A DNA stretch of 64,000 nt from NCBI RefSeq assembly GCF_031769215.1, contig NW_026782240.1:496001-560000 (forward strand). The letters run 5' to 3'. Source of the DNA: Ylistrum balloti (taxonomy: Eukaryota). This document shows, in pieces, positions 3,301 to 48,775 of the stretch (positions are counted from its first letter, which is position 1; each line of letters starts with the position of its first letter). The notes below the pieces were generated by a model. It was given only the letters and a program-made list of their open reading frames with translations. It was not told the DNA's origin and did no database searches. Made by a program: the position numbers and the translations under genes.

Positions 3301-6300
3301 TTGTGTGGTGTTCATTAACGAGTCTAGATTTTCTTTGTACTACCAAGGCAGCAGAAAAAGGGTATATCGCAGATGCAGTGAGCGTTTTACCAATGTATGC
3401 ATGGTTATGCAATAAATTCTGAGGGGCTCATGCCATGGTTTGCGAAGACATTTCCTAAGAAAAATCTCAAAGCAGTCAGATACTGAGACAGATCCTCCAA
3501 CTATATTCAGCAAGAAAATGCTCGACCACATGTTGCTAGAGTCTGTCATGATTTTCTCACAGTGAACAATGTAAAACTTCTAGAATGGCCTCCATATAGC
3601 CCTGATATCTATTAAACATCTTAGGGATGAGCTTGATGGACAAACAAGAATACATAGAACCTCCAACTAACCTGGCCCAGATGAATTCAGCATTGACTTG
3701 AGGTAAATTAAACATTTTAAGAAATTTCATACATAAGAGAATCTGTACAGGAATCCTGGCCAGAGATGTCCACACCAGGTACTGAAGCATCATTTTCTAT
3801 AATGTGGGTATCCCACTCACAGTGACTAACAGTAATACAAGTGACGTCATACACACTTTCCTTTTCAGTATTGTAAAGAGTAGACTCATCCCTTAATTTA
3901 AATTTAAGGTTTTGTATAAATGTTCAAAACGATCATAAGTTATCAACTGCTTAACTCACTTGGGCCTTTTTTTGTCGGATATAAAATTAATGTATCATAG
4001 CAGTCATGATCTAAAAACTTACTTGGTATATGTTGGCTGCTGCTAGCAGGAATGCTAAGGTCAAGATGAAACCCCCATTGTGAAGCGTTGTAAGCCACAA
4101 ATATCACAAGGTAGGTCACAGAAATAGTACCTGAGCAATATATCATATGACAAAGACTTTTGTTAATCATTCATCAATAATATTACCCATAATATAATAA
4201 TAATATAGTATTACTCTGAATCTCTCTCTTCACTGCTAGTAGCATTTCCTCAGAAAGTGATTTACATAAACAGTTTTCAAAGTGCATTTGCAAAAGTATT
4301 TTTTATCTATTGAGAATATTTCATTATAGCAGGAGCACACAAGTGAAAATGATAAGTAACACACAAACAATATCATTGTTTTGTAAGTTAATAGTGTTGC
4401 ATATTAAAATGAATTCCTTTGTGACTCATACTTAAGGACTTGGCAACAAATTGCCAGGTGCTGGCTCTAAATGAAAATCCTGCCCTTTACAAGTATTGAA
4501 AAAGATAGCTTTTTTCACATTGTTAAATGAAAATTATTGACGAAGATAGCTTTTCATTATCTACTTTTTATTGTGTTACAATACATAGGGTACAGATACA
4601 TAGGGTCAAGTATACAGATACTCACCTAAAGAATTAAATTTTGTGAAGAAAGTAGGCGACTTAAAGTTGATAAGGGGGAGAAGTACAGCGACGAGGAACA
4701 ATGGCACAGTGTGGTCCTCCTGCCAAACACGGTCAAGGGTGGCATCATGGGTGTGGCTAGCTGACCCCATCCACATCAGGTGTGGAAGTGAGTTCATGCT
4801 GGCATTATGAGTTAAGTACACAGAACCATTTTGCCCAGCAGGTGGGTGAGGACAAACTGTTAAAAAATTCCATTTATCATAACATGTATGATAATAACAA
4901 AAGATACATATTGATGCATGTTTAAAATTATGATGTAGTTAGCACCAAATGCATCTACTGGGCAGTATATTGATAGCACTAAACAGAAGGTATGTTACAC
5001 AAAAATTTCCACATTTCTATTGGTTATTTTAATTAAATTAGTTCTATCAACATGTATTCCAGACAGCTTGTACTACTCATCTGGATATCTAAATCAACAT
5101 TCAAAGTAATTTTAGTATACAATAGTGTCTGTCATCCATCTGTTAACAAGTACTTAAAACAATTTCTTCTAATTTAACTGCAAAAATCCTTATGTGATAC
5201 AGACCAGAAAAGCTAACAAGATTTTGAAGAAACTACCAGGCACAGACAATTACTGAACCACTGAATCTCTATGAGAATTGGTTTAGAGGTCCTCTCTGGA
5301 CAACATATAGACAACATTAATACCCTGACCACACTGTAATGGGCAACATATAGACAACTTTAATACCCTGACCACACTGTAATGGACAACATATAGACAA
5401 CTTTAATACCCTGACCACACTGTAATTGACAATATAGGAACAACTTTAATACCCTGACCAGACTGTAATACACAACATATAGACAACATTAATACGCTGA
5501 CCACACTGTAATGGACAACATATAGACAACTTTAATACCCTGACCACACTGTAATGGACAACATATAGACAACTTCAATACCCTGACCAGACTGTAATGG
5601 ACAACATATAGACAGCTTCAATACCCTGACCAGACTGTAATGGGCAACATATAGACAACATTAATACCCTGACCATACTGTAATGGGCAACATATAGACA
5701 ACATTAATACCCTGACCACACTGTAATGGACAACATATAGACAACTTTAATACCCTGACCACACTGTAATGGGCAACATATAGACAACATTAATACCCTG
5801 ACCACACTGTAATGGGCAACATATAGACAACTTTAATACCCTGACCAGACTGTAATGGACAACATATAGACAACTTTAATACCCTGACCACACTGTAATT
5901 GACAATATATAGACAACTTTAATACCCTGACCAGACTGTAATGGACAACATATAGACAACATTAATACCCTGACCACACTGTAATTGACAACATATAGAC
6001 AACTTTAATACCCTGACCAGACTGTAATTGACAATATAGGAACAACTTTAATACCCTGACCAGACTGTAATGGACAACATATAGACAACTTTAATACCCT
6101 GACCACACTGTAATTGACAATATATAGACAACATATAGACAACTTTAATACCCTGACCACACTGTAATGGGCAACATATAGACAACTTTAATACCCTGAC
6201 CAGACTGTAATTGACAATATAGGAACAACTTTAATACCCTGACCAGACTGTAATGGACAACATATAGACAACTTTAATACCCTGACCACACTGTAATGGA

Positions 6301-9300
6301 CAACATATAGACAACTTTAATACCCTGACCAGACTGTAATGGACAACATATAGACAACTTTAATACCCTGACCAGACTGTAATGGACAACATATAGACAA
6401 CTTTAATACCCTGACCACACTGTAATGGGCAACATATAGACAACATTAATACCCTGACCAGACTGTAATGGACAACATATAGACAACTTTAATACCCTGA
6501 CCAGACTGTAATGGACAACATATAGACAACTTTAATACCCTGACCACACTGTAATGGGCAACATATAGACAACTTTAATACCCTGACCACACTGTAATGG
6601 GCAACATATAGACAACTTTAATACCCTGACCAGACTGTAATGGGCAACATATAGACAACTTTAATACCCTGACCAGACTGTAATGGACAACATATAGACA
6701 ACTTTAATACCCTGACCAGACTGTAATGGACAACATATAGACAACATTAATACCCTGACCACACTGTAATTGACAATATAGGAACAACTTTAATACCCTG
6801 ACCAGACTGTAATGGGACAACACCCTGACCAGACTGTAATGGACAACATATAGACAACATTAATACCCTGACCACACTGTAATGGGCAACATATAGACAA
6901 CATTAATACCCTGACCACACTGTAATGGGCAACATATAGACAACATTAATACCCTGACCACACTGTAATGGGCAACATATAGACAACATTAATACCCTGA
7001 CCACACTGTAATGGGCAACATATAGACAACATTAATACCCTGACCACACTGTAATGGGCAACATATAGACAACATTAATACCCTGACCACACTGTAATGG
7101 GCAACATATAGACAACTTTAATACCCTGACCACACTGTAATGGACAACATATAGACAACTTTAATACCCTGACCAGACTGTAATGGACAACATATAGACA
7201 ACTTTAATACCCTAATCAGTCTAAAGGACAGCATGTAATGAGTGGACATTCTTTTTTAACAATAATAAATACTCACTGTAATCTTTAGAATTTTGTGTGG
7301 AATTAACAGCATCAGAATCTGAAGCTTTGTCTAAGAATCAAAACAAGAAATTCTGTAATCATCCAGTCTTAATATACTGCATGTAAAAACTTTAGAAAGA
7401 TGAATATAACTTAAATTTTTTCAATGAAAAATTATGTTTGTCTCAAGAGAAAGATGGCAATGATTTTGATAAAGTGAATAACATTGTTTTGATGTATTTA
7501 CTTTACATGAAACATGAACATTTTACACAAAAATTATAAAACTATAAAACACAAAAATTTAAATAAAAACCTATAACCTGACTATGTATACTTACGGTAG
7601 ATAAAGGTGACAATATTGTAGAGAAAATTTGACATGAGTATCCAGTAGACAATGGCCCCGCCCAAAAGTGTCAGAAGGGATGAGACTACTGCCAGAATCT
7701 GGGCCCAACGACCCAGATAATGTTGACATACATCAGAAAAGTCTAAAGCCTCACTTGTGGAATCCGATGCTGTCAACATTTTAACATTCTGTTAGTTTAC
7801 ATATGTACATATATAGAACTACACTGAACATGTGCACAAAGAACAACAGATGTTTCACACAAATGTCCATTTAATGGTTTTATAACAGGACTGAATTTAT
7901 GCCAATTAATTTTCTGTGTAGTTAACACAATCAATTTTCTGTGTAGATAACACATAATTGTATTGAGAAGACTTGGGTTACATATTTATGCCTTGTACTG
8001 CTGTCAGTGTGTCACTAAGATTACTTACACATGTCCTGTACTGCTGTCAGTGTGTCACTAAGGTTACTTACACATGTCCTGTACTGCTGTCAGTGTGTCA
8101 CTAAGGTTACTTACACATGTCCTGTACTAAGGTTACTTACACATGTCCTGTACTGCTGTCAGTGTGTCACTAAGGTTACTTACACATGTCCTGTACTGCT
8201 GTCAGTGTGTCACTAAGGTTACTTACACATGTCCTGTACTGCTGTCAGTGTGTCACTAAGGTTACTTACACATTTCCTGTACTGCTGTCAGTGTGTCACT
8301 AAGGTTACTTACACATGTCCTGTACTGCTGTCAGTGTGTCACTAAGGTTACTTACACATGTCCTGTACTGCTGTTAGTGTGTCACTATGATTACTTACAC
8401 ATGTCCTGTACTGCTGTCAGTGTGTCACTAAGGTTACTTACACATGTCCTGTACTGCTGTCAGTGTGTCACTAAGATTACTTACACATGTCCTGTACTGC
8501 TGTCAGTGTGTCACTAAGATTACTTACACATGTCCTGTACTGCTGTCAGTGTGTGACCAAGGTTACTTACACATGCCCTGTACTGCTGTCAGTGTGTGAC
8601 CAAGGTTACTTACACATGTCCTGTACTGCTGTCAGTGTGTCACTAAGGTTACTTACACATGTCCTGTACTGCTGTCAGTGTGTCACTAAGGTTACTTACA
8701 CATGTCCTGTACTGCTGTCAGTGTGTGACCAAGGTTACTTACACATGCCCTGTACTGCTGTCAGTATACGGTAGCTGGTGTATAACATGAGGCCTGCCAT
8801 CAATACCAGCAGTATAATGCCAGTCACAAACCCGGCCTACAACAAGCAAAGACCAATTAACCAGTACATTTAATCCTTAAAATGATGGTTCATCCTTCAA
8901 CCTTGACGGCAAAATAAAAACATAAGAAAGAAAACAATTTTCCTACATTTTATTCTGCAGGATAAAAACTTGAAAGTTTTAAGAACTCTTTTTTTCAACA
9001 AAGCTGTCCCCAGAAAAAGCATACAAAGGTACATTCCTATTCTTTATTTGCAAAATATTACATCTACCCATGATGCCCCAAAATTCTTCAATCTGGTTCA
9101 CCTCTGTTATATGTTCAAAATGACCTGTCTCACCATGATATTGAACATCCTAAACATACAAATGCTGTACCTGTCTTATTGCCCAAGGCATACTTAAGAT
9201 TGATGTCCCCATCATGGTATTCCAAAGTGAAAATCTACAAGACAAATCAGTATGACATTAATTTCAAAACATGTTGTATGTTTTGTCATCAAAAATACAT

Positions 9301-31344: not shown

Positions 31345-32010
31345 AGTGAGGTTCACAAGTACACTAACCTATACAGTGAGGTTCACATGTACACTAACCT
31401 ATACAGTGAGGTTCACATGTACACTAACCTATACAGTGATGTTCACATGTACACTATCCTATACAGTGAGGTTCACATGTACACTAACCTATACAGTGAG
31501 GTTCACATGTACACTAACCTAAACAGTGAGGTTCACATGTACACTAACCTATACAGTGAGGTTCACATGTACACTAACCTATACAGTGATGTTCACATGT
31601 ACACTAACCTAAACAGTGAGGTTCACATGTACACTAACCTAAACAGTGAGGTTCACATGTACACTAACCTATACAGTGAGGTTCACATGTACACTAACCT
31701 ATACAGTGAGGTTCACATGTACACTAACCTATACAGTGAGGTTCACATGTACACTAACCTATACAGTGAGGTTCACATGAACTCTATCCTATACAGTGAG
31801 GTTCACATGTACACTAACCTAAACAGTGAGGTTCACATGTACACTAACCTATACAGTGAGGTTCACATGTACACTAACCTATACAGTGAGGTTCACATGT
31901 ACACTATCCTATACAGTGAGGTTCACATGTACACTAACCTATACAGTGAGGTTCACATGTACACTATCCTATACAGTGAGGTTCACATGTACACCAGCCT
32001 TAATAGTGAG
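31345..32010. repeat. 30-bp minisatellite, about 22 near-identical copies
   Basis: Unit gttcacatgtacactaacctatacagtgag; explains ORFs 31387-32031 and 31826-32077. Confidence 0.98.
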
Positions 32011-32643
32011 GTCCAAATGCATACTAGCTAGACTAAAACGTGAGATTGACATGTACACGTTCAAGACATATGTTTGAGATCCTTGAGTTAATGGCACATA
32101 AAATGATGTAAACAAGACAAGTGTCTAGACTAGTATTTCAACTATGAGTGACTTGATGAATAAAAAAATATATTTGTATATTAGATGTCTTCTTTGTGCT
32201 ATCTAGTACAAAAAAGAAATACCACAGTTTGAAAGAAGTTTTATCTATCGCAATAAAAATGTTTGCAGATTCAGCTGAACATCGGCAACAATCTTGTTAC
32301 CTCCCTTTCTAACAGTACCTACAATGATCAAACATTGCACGTAGGCTAGTTACTAACTAATGACCATAAACAGTCATCAGACATCATTTCTTTTGGTCAA
32401 CACTGCTGAGAAAAAAATTTCAATACAATTTGCGATCATCCTTGTTGTTAGTCACATTTTCTTTTTTTCAAAAGGGAAAACAAGGTTGATCAATGTTTGA
32501 AAAAGATGTACACTGAATTTGATCATTAACTAAGCTGAGCTACGAGACCAAGAAAATGATCCATCCACCTTGTATCTAGAGATAGATAGTACCCAGAAAT
32601 TGAAACAACAGTAACAAATATAACATAAAAAATTTAGTTTGAT

Positions 32644-35600
32644 CTATCTGCCAGCTTCATAACCAGGAAAGAAATTCTGTAATATTGTCCGCAGTGTTTT
32701 GTTAACTTTGAGTTCATCCTCATCCTGCTTCAGGTCAGTTCGACACATAGGACAGCTGTACACCTCAGCTTTGAATGATCTGAGTAAACATGGCTGAAAC
32801 AAAATATAAATTACTAATAAGACAACAATGCAGACAAAACCCTAATGTTTAATTCATATTTTGTAATTCAGAAGAAATTTGCAGGTGAGGACAATTGAGT
32901 TTGTTGTGACAATTAAAGACTAACACTAACAAAACAATGATCTTCTCTTTCAGAAATCAGTCCCAATGTACCTAAATAACAATTTGGCTTTTTTAAAGAA
33001 AAAAAAAAAAGAAAAATTCAACAAGAGGCTCATGGGCCTTAACGATCATCAAACTACAAAAACTTCCGGTAGGGAGAAGGGTTATTTTTTTTCTACTTTG
33101 AATGAAACCTTACTAAGAAGCTGTTTTCCATGATGCAAAAGGTAGTTTTGGTTAAGTGTTGGTAACTGTAACAAGTGTTACATATGTTTTGCCAGTAAAG
33201 TGTGAAATAGATATTGCTTAGGAAAACCATGATTGTGCAATCATGTTACAAACTGGCCACCCTGGCTGCTGTAGCGAAGTTTTGACGAGGTCGAAAAATA
33301 ACAACACTTTGTCTTTGTTGGCTATCTTTCTTTAACATTCCCACTATTTTTTCTTTAGGTAAATGGCACCATTGGAACTGGAGAAGAAGTTCAAAATATA
33401 TTTTTCAAGATTGTGGCCATGGCAGCCATCTTGGATTTCAGACATGCCTGAAAAATAACAACACTTGGTCAGGATCATCTCAGGATCATTTCATGCAAGT
33501 TTGTGCTCAATCCAAGTGGTGGAACTTGAGAAATTTGAAATGTCAAAAGTTTACACACTGCGGATGATGACAGACAAAGCATGATGACTATAGGTCATCA
33601 GATAACCTAAAAATCAAACTTGCCAAAGACATGCTTCAGTTTTAGAGATAAAGGACACCAGATTGCTTCCTGCTGTATCAACACGTTACACATTAAACTT
33701 ACCTTACAGATATTATGGTTGCAGACAGTTGTGACAGGTTTGAACACAACCTCCTGACAACAGATACAATTGAAAAGCTCCTCTACTTTCCCTAGAAACT
33801 TCTGCAAAAGAATTGATGTAAAGTCACGAAGCGTGTATTTCCTATCCAATTGTGTATAGGTAAGGTCATATATTGAAGTTTCTGTAACAATACAGCAATA
33901 TTATTTCATACATTATTCTATCAAACAGAAACGCATCCCAAAAATGACAAAAGGCTGTTATGCTGATATCAAATCCTGTTATCTCAAATCTGATAGCCTC
34001 ACTTACTGAATGCCTGTCTACAAAAATCATGAAACTAAATATGGCCAACAGCTAGACAGTGTTTTTCCAGTTACCAATATATTTCCACAGCAAATATTGT
34101 CTTCACACTGAAATAACTTTTCCAGAGAATAGCTCATTTCACTCTATACACATAATAGATTGTGTTGCAGTTCTTCGGAGTTTTGTCTTCATACCAAGAA
34201 TGATAGTGAACATGTTAAACCTAAACCTGACCTTTAAATTTAAATGCTTCCATGTCACTTACCTGTCCCCCCTCCTTGGTAAGTAACATAGCATCCTCCC
34301 ACAGCTTTTTGTTAATTTCATCCTGTTTGATGAGCTGTAGCTGTGCCGAGTCTATTTTGTATTTGGCCACCTTCTGTTTCTTCTCTGGAGTGCCACCTGG
34401 TGAGGAATCTGGACAAAAGATGAATAATTTTTTCAATGTTTCAGTGGGTTATGGGCAAAGCAATGCTGTCAGATTATGTGTAAAGACATTCCTAGACAAA
34501 TTCCAAGTCATTATCTGTGATAATTCAAATCAATACATTAAAATTTGAATTGTTTGCGTCCTTGTTTCTGGCATGTACACCTAAATACATGTCAGTTTTG
34601 AAAAGAAACTGAAAAATGTGTATCTGCAAAGAAACTCTAATGGATAGTTCAATGGTGCCAATAATTTGATATTCCAGACAAAAATATCTTTTTTCATTTG
34701 AAGGATGTGAAGTTTAACATTGCCAATAGGATACTTTGAAAGCATCTAGCAGGAGACATTTAAACCAATGTATTGTTGAGTTTTAAGACTACAGAATAAT
34801 CAGCTGATCAAGTCATCTTTCTGTTGTATCAGTCTATGATAAATACATCAGAACAGTTTGGATTCCAAATGAAAGGTATAATAGATTTAGTGATCATTAA
34901 TATTTTAAGTTGAATGCAATGTCCTGTTTTGTGAAGATTATTTCCTATTAATATATTACCTAGTTGTTGTTGTCTGGTCTAGAAAGTGTTAAGTGTTAAT
35001 CCTTTCCTGATTGAATAAATCTTTTAAATATTTGGATATATTATTTGGGATATTCCCTCATTTCAATATTAATATGTATGTACCCAAGTAAGTTTGTTTC
35101 CTCACTTAGTATGGAGTACATACCAGAGTCACTTCTCTTCCTCTTGCCTTTTCTCTTCTTCCCAGAAGAGGATCCTGATGTTTCCTCTTCCTCCTCTTTC
35201 TTCGCCATGGCCTCCAGATACCCAGCAGGATACTTTAGAAACATGCAGGTATACAATCACTTTTCACATTCAGATACAGTTTTAGATCACCAACTTTATG
35301 AATAACAGTTGGAGGAAATACCAATGTTATTTTAAGCAAGAGGTGCAATGGGCCTGCATCACTGACTTGGTAATTGATGTTTTTTTGGTTTTTTTTTTTT
35401 TTAAATATATGTCATTGCTTTCCAAAGCAAATCTATCAAATTTATCCATTTACCTGTCAGATAAATCTATCAATTTTATCCATTTACCTGTCATATAAAT
35501 CTATCAATTTTATCCATTTACCTGTAAGATATCATGATTATAGGATTTTCAGCTGAGCAGAGGAAGTCATATGAAAAATTTAACAAATATGACTTGAATA

Positions 35601-41600: not shown

Positions 41601-44600
41601 GTTAGTGTAGTGATATAGATAACATTTAGTACAAGTTTCTGTCCTTTAGGGCAGTGTGGTTAGTGTAGTGAAGTGTAGTGGATATAGATAATAAGAATTA
41701 TGGAAATCCAATTCAATACAAGTGATTTCAAAATTAGTTTATTCTTAGAAATATCAAAGTTTTTTCCCCCCAACTTATCTTGGGGTACAACTTTTAAACA
41801 AATTTTAATCTTTATTTTAACTCTAAAACTTTGTCTGAATAAATGAATACTTACCTGAACCCTGAACTTCCACAGGGTGCCAACCTCTACACCAGGAATG
41901 GACCCAAAATGATTTGCTGGAACAACTGTGCACACATTCTGTCGGCCCACACAAGCCATTCCCTGAAATAGTGAGATTTCCTACCTTTAATTCTGCACTA
42001 AAGATAGTCCCTTCCATGAACATATTCTTGTTCATAAAAATATAACATAGGCTTCAAAATCAATCTAATCTTATTCTTAACACATATGCATTATGGTCCT
42101 AATGGTACTACTTGCAGAAGTTTTAATTTGGTCCTAATGGTACTACTTGCAGAAGATTTAATTTGGTCCTAATGGTACTACTTGCAGAAGATTTAATTTA
42201 ACTATATTCACAGTCTAATGCATCATTAAATAGCTGTCAACTCTCAACAACAAGGACAAACCTAAAAATTGGCTTCAAGAAATTAAAGAACTACAAAGTG
42301 TCCAAGGTAGTTGATAACACAAAAAAAGTTATTACTATCCAACCTTACCCTGCCCCAATCTTGTCTTGTATAGATATTAATACAGAACCTTACCCTGCCC
42401 CAATCTCGTCTTGTATAGATATTAATACAGAACCTTACCCTGCCCCAGTCTCGTCTTGTATAGATATTAATACAGAACCTTACCCTGCCCCATTCTCGTC
42501 TTGTATAGATATTAATACAGAACCTTACCCTGCCCTAATCTTGCCTTGTATAGATATTAATACAGAACCTTACCCTGCCCTAATCTTGCCTTGTATAGAT
42601 ATTAATACAGAACCTTACCCTGCCCTAATCTTGTCTTGTATAGATATTAATACTGAACCTTACCCTGCCCCAGTCTCGTGTTGTATAGATATTAATACAG
42701 AACCTTACCCTGCCCTAATCTTGTCTTGTATAGATATTAATACAGAACCTTACCCTGCCCCAGTCTCGTGTTGTATAGATATTAATACAGAACCTTACCC
42801 TCCCCCAGTCTCGACTCGTGGAGTTTGTTGATGATGCCATCCTGGCTTTCTTTTTGCTTTCTTTTAACTTCTCACCAGCTTTTACAATTGCATCACTGTC
42901 TGTTTTACAATCTGGACAATACCTGTAAAAGTATCTGTGTGTAAATAAATTCATCAATGTGTACTGAAACATGTTTTCCATCATGTATACAGGATACCAG
43001 ATATTTGGTTTTCAAACTTTTTGATTTTTTGTAATATGTGTTTGAAAAATTTCGGCGTATATCAGATACATCTAATGAACTCCAACCAACCTTCTGGAGA
43101 TTATATTACACATACATGTACAACTCATTGATCTTAAATCACTCTTTCATTATTCCGAATTGAAGCCAAACTTGTTGCTACAAAAACTTATCACCACTTG
43201 TGAGGTAATTTGCCCTCTAGACACATCTAAATTCTGTCTTATCAAAAGGTATACTTTTCTGAGGAATATTTAAGATTAGTATACTGCAAATTCATGCGGA
43301 GAGAGATTTTTGGCTAGTCACTTTCATGGTATGGGTTTAAGAAAATGTATACTGCTACAAAGAGTGAAACAGTATATCAGTGTTACAAAGACTACAAGGT
43401 GAAGTAAAAGCACTTTAACGTAATCTTTCTGCTACATCATAGAAATTGCTCTTCATTTTGTTTTGAAGTAATTTTCACATGTGCAGATGCACAGAAGTCA
43501 ATGAAAGACCAGATAGTATCCTATTAGATAACATGATATCAAATAGAAAATTGTAAAAATTTGGTTTTAATAATGAACACATCAGATGAAGTATCATTTC
43601 ATGTGCGATTAAACATTTTCAAGGCTCCCTAAAAAAATTGCAGTGTTAAGGGTAATATCATAATGAATTCAAAATTTGATCAAAATTAAAATACACATGA
43701 ACATGCTGTTTTCCCAATTTGGAGCTGCCTCCTCCTTGTCATTGGACTGTATAAAAACCTACCACTCATCGTCCTCAGGAATACTGTCGAGCGGAGGGTT
43801 CATACACTGGAGATGGTAGGCCTGGTCACACTCATCACAGAGGATCTGTTTGTCAGGGTCGTTCTTACCACCACACACACAACAAGCACAGTGCTTACAT
43901 TTCCTACGAGGGTTGTCCATGCAATGACTACAATCTGGCTTGTTCTGACCTGCAGATAAAACAATGAAAATAATCAAATGCCTCTCATCATGTGAGGAAA
44001 AGTTGTGCAATGACAAGCACCGTAAAGGTTGGGTCTTATGTTTTATATACATTTATTTGGTTGCTACTCAACAGTAAACAATTGATAAAGTTCACCATAA
44101 AAGTTTGTAAAATTGCTTTCTGGCAGATGATTTCCCATGGTAACATACGCTAACTTACGTTTCACAGGTGATTGTGACGGATCTTTAGTAACATCTTCCA
44201 CATTAAGTTGTGTACCAGCTTTTTCAATTTCAAATATTTCATTCAAAAATAGAATGTTGCAGTCATCAAGAGGCATGAGGTCAGGGCTGGATAGAAAAAA
44301 ATTAATCATAACTGCAAGCTTCTGAACTATAATCAACACCTGTGGCTTTCTCATTGCAATTTCTTTTATTAATTTGATGCAAAATATAAATATTCTTGAG
44401 CAACTTTTCACTGTAGATCCAAATTTTGATGTTCATATCAAAAGAAGGATTATTTCTTTCAGTTCATTTTGTAAGCTCCTCAGCTACAATAAATATCTTT
44501 TTGCTCCATGTAGATGTTTTTATGCAAAATAATACAAGAAGTAACTTTGTAGATATAAAATTTGTTATTTTATCAGGAAAAAATGCTTTTCAATTAAAAA

Positions 44601-48482: not shown

Positions 48483-48775
48483 TGCTCAGATTCGGAGATC
48501 AAACAAATTTGTAAGATGTCCGTCCTACAGCAACCTATCAGTCAAAACAAGGGTACATGTGTTTGAGTGGCGGGAAAATAATGGGGTGTTCCCGCGGTAT
48601 TTCGGAACATTATATGTATGGAAAATGAAGACTAAATATCCGATAAGTTCCGAAATGACGGAAGTTGTCAACGACGCGACCTTGTAGCCTTGACCTGAAT
48701 TGACCTTTACACCAGCGACAAGTCGTGATCCCGGATTGACAGGTGTTTCGTTGTGGAAGCCGGCAAGGCGGCGTT
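48483..48775. promoter_or_regulatory. Bidirectional promoter / 5' UTR region shared by UHRF1 and DHCR24
   Basis: ATGs at 48482 (-) and 48776 (+) with 293 bp between them; CpG-richer than the flanks; GGCGGGAAAA (48569-48578), TTCCCGCGG (48589-48597), ATGGGGTGTT (48581-48590), TGACCT-gaat-TGACCT (48691-48706). Confidence 0.8.

What the first reader, a model, noticed from the sequence alone, without database searches (positions are those of the whole stretch)
42341..42815. UHRF1 exon 8 donor amplified x11; the first decoy gives an in-frame 15-aa insertion at the SRA N-terminus
Seen: the 45-bp unit is about 15 nt of exon end (RDWGR) plus about 30 nt of intron, with AGG|GTAAGG in each copy. Splicing at the second donor (42754/42753) would add [15 protein letters not shown] in frame before GMACVGR; later copies lie beyond a TAG (RQD*). 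Established: RDWG(K/R)GMACVGR begins the SRA hemi-methyl-CpG reader. Inference: possible productive isoform with a duplicated RDWGR motif plus several NMD-type isoforms for the key maintenance-methylation factor.
Basis: partly seen in the sequence, partly recalled or inferred. Interest (0 to 1): 0.75.

Follow-up and report, generated by a model that had tools for sequence, protein, structure and literature searches.

The report
Splice-donor minisatellite in scallop UHRF1
In the saucer scallop Ylistrum balloti, a young 45-bp tandem repeat has copied the end of a UHRF1 exon with its splice donor ten extra times into the intron; this kind of repeat is already known and probably harmless, and I found no sign that the extra donors are used.

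Summary
At 42341-42813 (minus strand) a 45-bp unit is repeated 10.5 times. It starts 15 nt inside coding exon 8 of UHRF1 and gives 11 identical donors (AGG|GTAAGGTT). Donor 2 would add [15 protein letters not shown] in frame. A TAG in copy 3 lies upstream of donors 3-11.

The window is 100% identical to Ylistrum balloti GCA_031769215.1. The orthologous intron in Argopecten, Pecten and Mizuhopecten has one donor and no array, so the array is young and specific to the Ylistrum lineage.

I found no evidence that the decoys are used. The annotated Y. balloti protein and all seven other scallop UHRF1 sequences in its cluster read SRDWGRGMACVGR without an insertion. No protein with the decoy peptide is in the public collection. 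An RNA-derived Argopecten contig uses the first of three tandem donors at another UHRF1 exon.

This is a new member of a known kind: the human F7 intron-7 VNTR and amphioxus "mirages". The scan has already noted the same class many times elsewhere in this genome, and once more in this window (SLC38A9). The isoform idea remains possible only as a minor by-product. Interest is low to moderate.

The parts
42799..42922 (-). UHRF1 coding exon 8. The first base completes the W codon; 42921-42799 encodes [41 protein letters not shown].
   Evidence: Sequence; tblastn of XP_060073689.1 and orthologues.
42341..42813 (-). 45-bp minisatellite, 10.5 copies. The structure is A(BA)x10, where A is 23 nt (the last 15 nt of the exon plus GTAAGGTT) and B is 22 nt (CTGTATTAATATCTATACAAGA).
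   Evidence: TRF; copies in register; B occurs only in the array.
42791..42801 (-). Authentic 5' splice site AGG|GTAAGGTT (exon ends at 42799). It has G at -4, where all decoys have C.
   Evidence: The junction matches the annotated protein and all orthologues.
42746..42756 (-). Decoy donor 2 (last exon-like base 42754). Its use would add 45 nt = [15 protein letters not shown] in frame.
42715..42717 (-). First in-frame TAG (copy 3). It is a premature stop for any transcript spliced at donors 3-11.
   Evidence: ORF end; copy table.
42341..42711 (-). Decoy donors 3-11, 45 nt apart. Their last exon-like bases are 42709, 42664, 42619, 42574, 42529, 42484, 42439, 42394 and 42349.
42290..42340 (-). 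Sequence after the last donor. It is probably the ancestral intron start, because it contains TTTTTTTGTGTTATC, similar to the Pecten intron start.
   Evidence: Local alignment score 25; 0.2% of shuffles reach it.
41963..42798 (-). Intron 8 (836 nt). It also contains a 35-bp x3 repeat at 42094-42199.
41855..41962 (-). UHRF1 coding exon 9 ([36 protein letters not shown]), which ends at CAG|GTAAGT.

Best explanation
This is a young minisatellite of the 'mirage' / F7-IVS7 type, specific to the Ylistrum lineage. A 45-bp unit holding the last 15 nt of UHRF1 exon 8, the donor GTAAGGTT and 22 nt of other sequence was amplified head to tail. The real donor is now followed by ten decoys, identical from -3 to +8 and 45 nt apart. 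Shown: the array, its absence from three other scallop genera, and an intact, conserved UHRF1 gene whose annotated product uses donor 1. Inferred: the spliceosome uses the first donor, the only one that directly follows the purine-rich exon body. The decoys are then silent or used at noise level, so the +15-aa form and the stop-containing forms would be minor by-products at most. The array is best read as a tolerated product of the high minisatellite turnover in scallop introns, not as a regulatory device.
For: The array and its 11 identical donors are real. The window equals Y. balloti GCA_031769215.1 at 17839/17839 bases. Intron 8 in Argopecten irradians, Pecten maximus and Mizuhopecten yessoensis has a single AGG|GTAAGG donor and no array. 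All decoys keep GGC, the state of Pecten and Mizuhopecten, whereas the real exon now has GGG, so the copies come from an earlier state of this exon end. All eight scallop UHRF1 proteins or transcripts in the cluster read SRDWGRGMACVGR, as do four other bivalves and a sea cucumber. No protein containing the decoy peptide is on record. The same gene carries independent border arrays in other scallops: a 27-bp x25 array on the Mizuhopecten exon-6 donor, and a 61-bp x3.3 array on the Argopecten exon-15 donor. An RNA-derived Argopecten contig joins the first of those three donors to exon 16. Array periods are 45, 43, 27 and 61 nt, so there is no bias toward multiples of three. Precedents: in human F7 IVS7 only the most upstream of 5-9 identical donors is used (PMC1557585); amphioxus mirages do not disturb splicing (PMC3087553).
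Against: Gnomon models and assembled contigs both drop rare isoforms. In-vitro and HeLa work with two strong sites 45 nt or more apart found almost exclusive use of the intron-proximal (downstream) site (PMC3413131). That rule would predict use of donor 11 here. Predicted RNA accessibility does not favour donor 1 (0.0055 against about 0.018 for the decoys). The origin of the 22-nt B segment is unexplained.
Confidence: 0.75

Rival explanations
1. The decoy donors are really used. Donor 2 gives a UHRF1 isoform with 15 extra residues in the PHD-SRA linker. Donors 3-11 give stop-containing transcripts that are degraded, so the array, and its copy number, tunes UHRF1 dosage.
For: All 11 donors are identical from -3 to +8. 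The period is 45 nt, so all are in frame, and copy 2 has no stop. Because the unit includes RDWGR, the conserved RDWGR-GMACVGR junction is rebuilt whichever donor is used. The intron-proximal rule for strong competing sites (PMC3413131) shows that downstream sites can win.
Against: No annotated or assembled scallop sequence carries an insertion. The array is missing from three other scallop genera, so no conserved function depends on it. Six of the ten decoys lack a stop, so an open copy 2 is expected by chance. Other scallop border arrays have periods that are not multiples of three. In F7 the decoys are silent. An Argopecten transcript uses the first of three tandem donors.
Confidence: 0.15
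2. The array acts as an intronic U1-snRNP landing pad. Extra U1 bound just downstream of exon 8 would strengthen exon definition or suppress premature cleavage, without the decoys themselves being spliced.
For: There are ten U1-complementary sites with G-runs within 460 nt of the real donor. F7 work shows that such pseudo-sites are functional yet unused.
Against: Three related genera splice the same, identically conserved donor without any array. Nothing here measures U1 binding. Across three UHRF1 loci, donor-spanning arrays are not significantly more frequent than random placement gives (3 against 1.1 expected, P about 0.10).
Confidence: 0.05
3. The array is an assembly artefact: a mis-expanded or collapsed repeat in the Y. 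balloti assembly.
For: Only one assembly of this species was available, and the exact ORFs across the array are found in no other public contig.
Against: The copies differ at defined positions and show a higher-order pattern (CGAGACTGG against CAAGATTAG variants), which stutter artefacts do not produce. Comparable arrays exist in three independent scallop assemblies. The copy number may still be wrong or polymorphic.
Confidence: 0.03

Closest known systems
Human F7 intron 7 37-bp VNTR (Borensztajn et al. 2006, PMC1557585)
   Same: It is a minisatellite whose first unit spans the exon-intron border, so the real donor is followed by several donors of identical sequence. In F7 only the most upstream donor is used physiologically.
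   Different: The unit is 45 bp with 11 donors, against 37 bp with 5-9. The host is a mollusc, not a mammal. Splicing was not measured here. Polymorphism was not tested here. Donor 2 is in frame and open, and its use would rebuild the conserved RDWGR-GMACVGR junction.
Amphioxus 'mirages' (tandem duplications of exon-intron borders in Adh3 and globin genes; Ebner et al. 2010, PMC3087553)
   Same: These are minisatellite-like tandem copies of an exon border plus adjacent intron. Many copies keep splice signals, and RT-PCR shows normal splicing. Edge copies are excluded from homogenisation.
   Different: Mirage units range from 10 to 160 bp and occur at both donors and acceptors. They are cephalochordate, not mollusc. 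The intron-gain model proposed for them has no support at this locus.
Other exon-border arrays in scallops
   Same: The anatomy is the same. I checked SLC38A9 at 7994-8765 (43 bp x18, TGT|GTAAGT), the Mizuhopecten UHRF1 exon-6 donor (27 bp x25) and the Argopecten UHRF1 exon-15 donor (61 bp x3.3).
   Different: Each sits at a different exon or gene with an unrelated unit, so they arose independently. The UHRF1 exon-8 array is not shared with related scallops, unlike some arrays described in note s1-236906.
Competing duplicated 5' splice sites in model substrates (Hodson et al. 2012, PMC3413131)
   Same: Identical 5' splice sites compete for one 3' splice site. A 45-nt spacing is exactly where their position effect becomes complete.
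   Different: Those substrates carry consensus-strength sites with high U1 occupancy and splice to the downstream site. Here the sites are of middling strength (six contiguous U1 pairs, my reading of the sequence). The gene's integrity also requires the upstream site.

Membership tests
Exon-border minisatellite (F7 IVS7 VNTR / amphioxus mirage type) | Head-to-tail tandem array of a short unit (tens of bp) | tested here: met
   Period 45, 10.5 copies, 94% matches, no indels.
Exon-border minisatellite (F7 IVS7 VNTR / amphioxus mirage type) | The first unit spans the authentic exon-intron border | tested here: met
   The array starts 15 nt before the exon end at 42799. The exon end is fixed by the annotated protein and 12 orthologues.
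Exon-border minisatellite (F7 IVS7 VNTR / amphioxus mirage type) | Downstream units carry splice sites identical to the authentic one | tested here: met
   11 of 11 copies carry AGG|GTAAGGTT.
Exon-border minisatellite (F7 IVS7 VNTR / amphioxus mirage type) | Normal splicing uses only the authentic, most upstream site | tested here: inconclusive
   The annotated protein and the cluster members use donor 1, and no decoy peptide is on record.
Exon-border minisatellite (F7 IVS7 VNTR / amphioxus mirage type) | Copy number varies between alleles or individuals (VNTR) | not testable with these tools
   Only one assembly exists, and exact look-ups of ORFs across the array found no other contig.
UHRF1 (host gene) | UBL - tandem tudor - PHD - SRA - RING architecture, with orthology to animal UHRF1 | tested here: met
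   Pfam finds ubiquitin 3-75, TTD 132-341, PHD 383-428, SAD_SRA 482-649 and RING 768-806 (RING E 7.9e-4, below Pfam's cut-off). Residues 380-680 match human UHRF1 chains at E 8.6e-158.

The most novel reading that the evidence does not exclude
The decoy array is a copy-number-dependent regulator of UHRF1 output. Leakage to donors 3-11 would send a share of transcripts to nonsense-mediated decay, and donor 2 would yield a linker-extended UHRF1. Alleles with different repeat numbers would then set different levels of the maintenance-methylation cofactor in Ylistrum. Even if that is wrong, 11 identical donors spaced 45 nt apart in an essential gene form a natural test between the 'first donor wins' and 'intron-proximal donor wins' rules, in a protostome.
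Probability: 0.06. Interest if true: 0.6.

Novelty: new member of a known kind. Interest (0 to 1): 0.27.

Why it matters
UHRF1 is the cofactor that recruits DNMT1 to hemimethylated DNA, so a splicing hazard inside it attracts attention. The evidence points to a tolerated, recent minisatellite of an already described type. Its value is mainly as one more documented case, in a well-conserved gene with clear outgroups, of how often scallop introns copy their own exon borders. It is also a ready natural substrate for testing how a spliceosome picks one among many identical donors. It does not currently support a new UHRF1 isoform.

Tried and rejected

2. Exact look-ups of the 89-aa minus-strand ORF (exon 8 read through into the array) and of the 177-aa plus-strand ORF across the array found nothing on record. 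Allele typing of the VNTR by this route failed.

3. A homologue search with the 89-aa ORF returned only exon-8 ORFs from other molluscs, none with the decoy peptide. Its length window of 49-155 aa means longer partial transcripts would be missed.

4. The representative search with the TTD exon gave no scallop full-length hit directly. The scallop cluster was reached through Tegillarca UHRF1.

5. Local RNA accessibility of the 11 donors gave no advantage to donor 1, so secondary structure does not explain donor choice.

6. Enrichment test: across three UHRF1 loci, 3 donor-spanning arrays were seen against 1.1 expected, P about 0.10. I therefore do not claim a donor-specific mechanism from my own data.

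7. Source of the 22-nt B segment: there is no other copy in the window and no match to the intron start of relatives.

8. Exons were searched separately by reference.

9. A literature search for Y. balloti genome or transcriptome papers found nothing useful.

Full report
**Observation.** On the minus strand of the window, Tandem Repeats Finder reports a 45-bp array at 42341-42813: 10.5 copies, 94% matches, no indels, score 806.
- Written in register, each of the 11 copies holds AGG|GTAAGGTT.
- Copy 1 is the true end of a coding exon (…ACGAGTCGAGACTGGGGGAGG|GTAAGG, …T S R D W G R). The next exon begins at 41962 after TTTCAG with GGAATGGCTTGTGTGGGCCGA (G M A C V G R).
- The ORF list reads straight through: …[33 protein letters not shown]. 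Donor 2 (42754/42753) would add 45 nt = [15 protein letters not shown] in frame.
- Copy 3 holds the first TAG (42717-42715). Copies 5, 6 and 7 carry the same CAAGATTAG variant.

**What the gene is and where it comes from.** Exon 9 matches the first residues of UHRF1 SRA crystal constructs (2zkd, E 3.5e-12).
- I reached the scallop UHRF1 cluster through a sea-cucumber and then a Tegillarca orthologue.
- The cluster holds Mizuhopecten, Pecten, Ylistrum and Argopecten proteins and one Logan transcript.
- The locus of XP_060073689.1 (Ylistrum balloti, GCA_031769215.1, JAUZWB010001033.1) is identical to window 49482-31644 over 17,839 of 17,839 bases.
- The protein has the UBL, TTD, PHD (383-428), SRA (482-649) and RING domains.
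- The exon 8/9 junction falls between R464 and G465. That is in the conserved PHD-SRA linker, 17 residues before the Pfam SRA domain, and exactly where crystal constructs start.
- The exon is the eighth coding exon.

**Age and origin.** I fetched the orthologous loci of Argopecten irradians, Pecten maximus and Mizuhopecten yessoensis.
- In all three, exon 8 ends …GACTGGGG(C/A)AGG|GTAAGG. Intron 8 (1056, 361 and 1591 nt) has a single donor and no array. The array therefore arose in the Ylistrum lineage.
- All ten decoys keep GGC, the state of Pecten and Mizuhopecten. The real exon end now reads GGG, a synonymous change. The copies were therefore taken from an earlier state of this exon end.
- The array is best written A(BA)x10. 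A is the 23-nt exon end plus GTAAGGTT. B is a 22-nt segment found nowhere else in the window.
- The sequence after the last A resembles the Pecten intron start (local score 25; 0.2% of shuffles reach it). The sequence after the first donor does not. That match rests on a T-rich stretch and is only suggestive.
- The source of B is unexplained.

The indirect evidence points one way:
- The RefSeq protein of Y. balloti carries no isoform label and reads TSRDWGRGMACVGR. From my knowledge of NCBI naming, no label implies a single annotated product.
- All seven other members of its 90% cluster read the same junction. So do Tegillarca, Ostrea, Sinanodonta, Potamilus and Apostichopus.
- Exact look-ups of the two ORFs that cross the array, and a homologue search with the read-through ORF, found no protein with [10 protein letters not shown].
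- Argopecten UHRF1 has its own 61-bp x3.3 array on the exon-15 donor, with three copies of GACAG|GTAGGT. A spliced Logan contig from run SRR19746220, 99% identical to that locus, joins the first of the three donors to exon 16.

Annotation pipelines and assembled contigs both drop rare forms. This evidence therefore argues against major use of the decoys, not against trace use.

**Mechanism.** Two published rules disagree.
- In human F7, a 37-bp VNTR whose first unit spans the exon 7 border gives 5-9 identical donors. Only the most upstream is used, in several cell types, even when the downstream ones are strengthened (PMC1557585).
- Here the sites are of middling strength: by my reading they form six contiguous pairs with U1, from -1 to +5.
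- Only donor 1 follows the purine-rich exon body.
- Use of any donor from 3 onward would truncate a conserved, intact gene.
- I therefore infer that donor 1 dominates, as in F7 and in the Argopecten transcript.
- Predicted local accessibility does not explain this, since donor 1 is if anything less open.
- Because the unit contains RDWGR, splicing from any decoy rebuilds RDWGR-GMACVGR. The +15-aa form would amount to an insertion five residues upstream in the poorly conserved ASSTNSTS stretch, and could be tolerated if it were made.

**Signs of selection for coding use.** I found none.
- Six of the ten decoys lack a stop, so an open copy 2 is expected by chance.
- Border arrays in this window and in the other scallop UHRF1 genes have periods of 45, 43, 27 and 61 nt.

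**The class.**
- The same anatomy occurs at SLC38A9 in this window: 43 bp x18, with exon end …TAVQGM and TGT|GTAAGT.
- It also occurs on the Mizuhopecten UHRF1 exon-6 donor: 27 bp x25, with 9 nt of exon plus GTAAGT….
- Earlier notes of this scan describe many more in this genome and named the F7 and mirage precedents. I checked both papers myself.
- In my own small sample of three UHRF1 loci, 3 of 26 arrays span a donor against 1.1 expected under random placement, P about 0.10. I cannot claim from these data that donors are preferred.
- Scallop introns are simply full of minisatellites. About 10% of this window is tandem array.

**Verdict.** This is a real, well-defined feature and a new member of a known kind. 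The proposed isoforms are arithmetically possible but unsupported, and by precedent unlikely to be more than splicing noise.

Noticed in passing
window 7994-8765 (minus strand): A second exon-border array in the same window. A 43-bp unit repeated about 18 times copies the last 26 nt of an SLC38A9-like exon (…ILTAVQGM) plus TGT|GTAAGTAACC. The period is not a multiple of three.
   Followed up: partly
window 5297-7213 (minus strand): A 43-bp x45 array begins about 65 nt downstream of a short exon that ends …GATTACA|GTGAGT. The unit contains ATTACAGTG, which resembles that exon end, and a GG|GTATTA motif. It may be a decayed border-derived array.
   Followed up: no
L004:7993-8679 (Mizuhopecten yessoensis UHRF1): A 27-bp x25 array copies the last 9 nt of coding exon 6 (CTGTCAAAC) plus GTAAGTTTCTGTCTGTCG. 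Many copies have mutated donors (ATAAGT, TTTAGT). The annotated protein uses the first donor.
   Followed up: partly
L002:14827-15028 and L005:2275-2345 (Argopecten): A 61-bp x3.3 array on the UHRF1 exon-15 donor holds three GACAG|GTAGGT sites. A spliced Logan contig (SRR19746220) uses the first of them.
   Followed up: yes
L002:11734-12522 (Argopecten irradians UHRF1): A 28-bp x27.6 pyrimidine-rich array ends exactly at the acceptor of exon 12. The transcript contig shows that this acceptor is used normally.
   Followed up: partly
L003:15059-18392 (Pecten maximus UHRF1, LOW QUALITY PROTEIN): Two exons (residues 575-630 and 676-711) and their flanking 44-bp acceptor-side repeat appear twice, about 2.5 kb apart. 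This is an internal segmental duplication or an assembly problem.
   Followed up: no
window 35429-35531 (minus strand): A 34-bp x3 repeat carries CAG|GTAAAT three times, about 370 nt inside the intron that follows the exon at 36040-35903. It is not at an exon border.
   Followed up: partly
window 31345-32026: A 30-bp x23 array lies about 620 nt downstream of the UHRF1 stop codon, either in the 3' UTR or intergenic.
   Followed up: no
window 48483-48775: UHRF1 and a DHCR24-like (FAD_binding_4) gene are head to head. This arrangement is kept in all four scallop loci fetched.
   Followed up: partly
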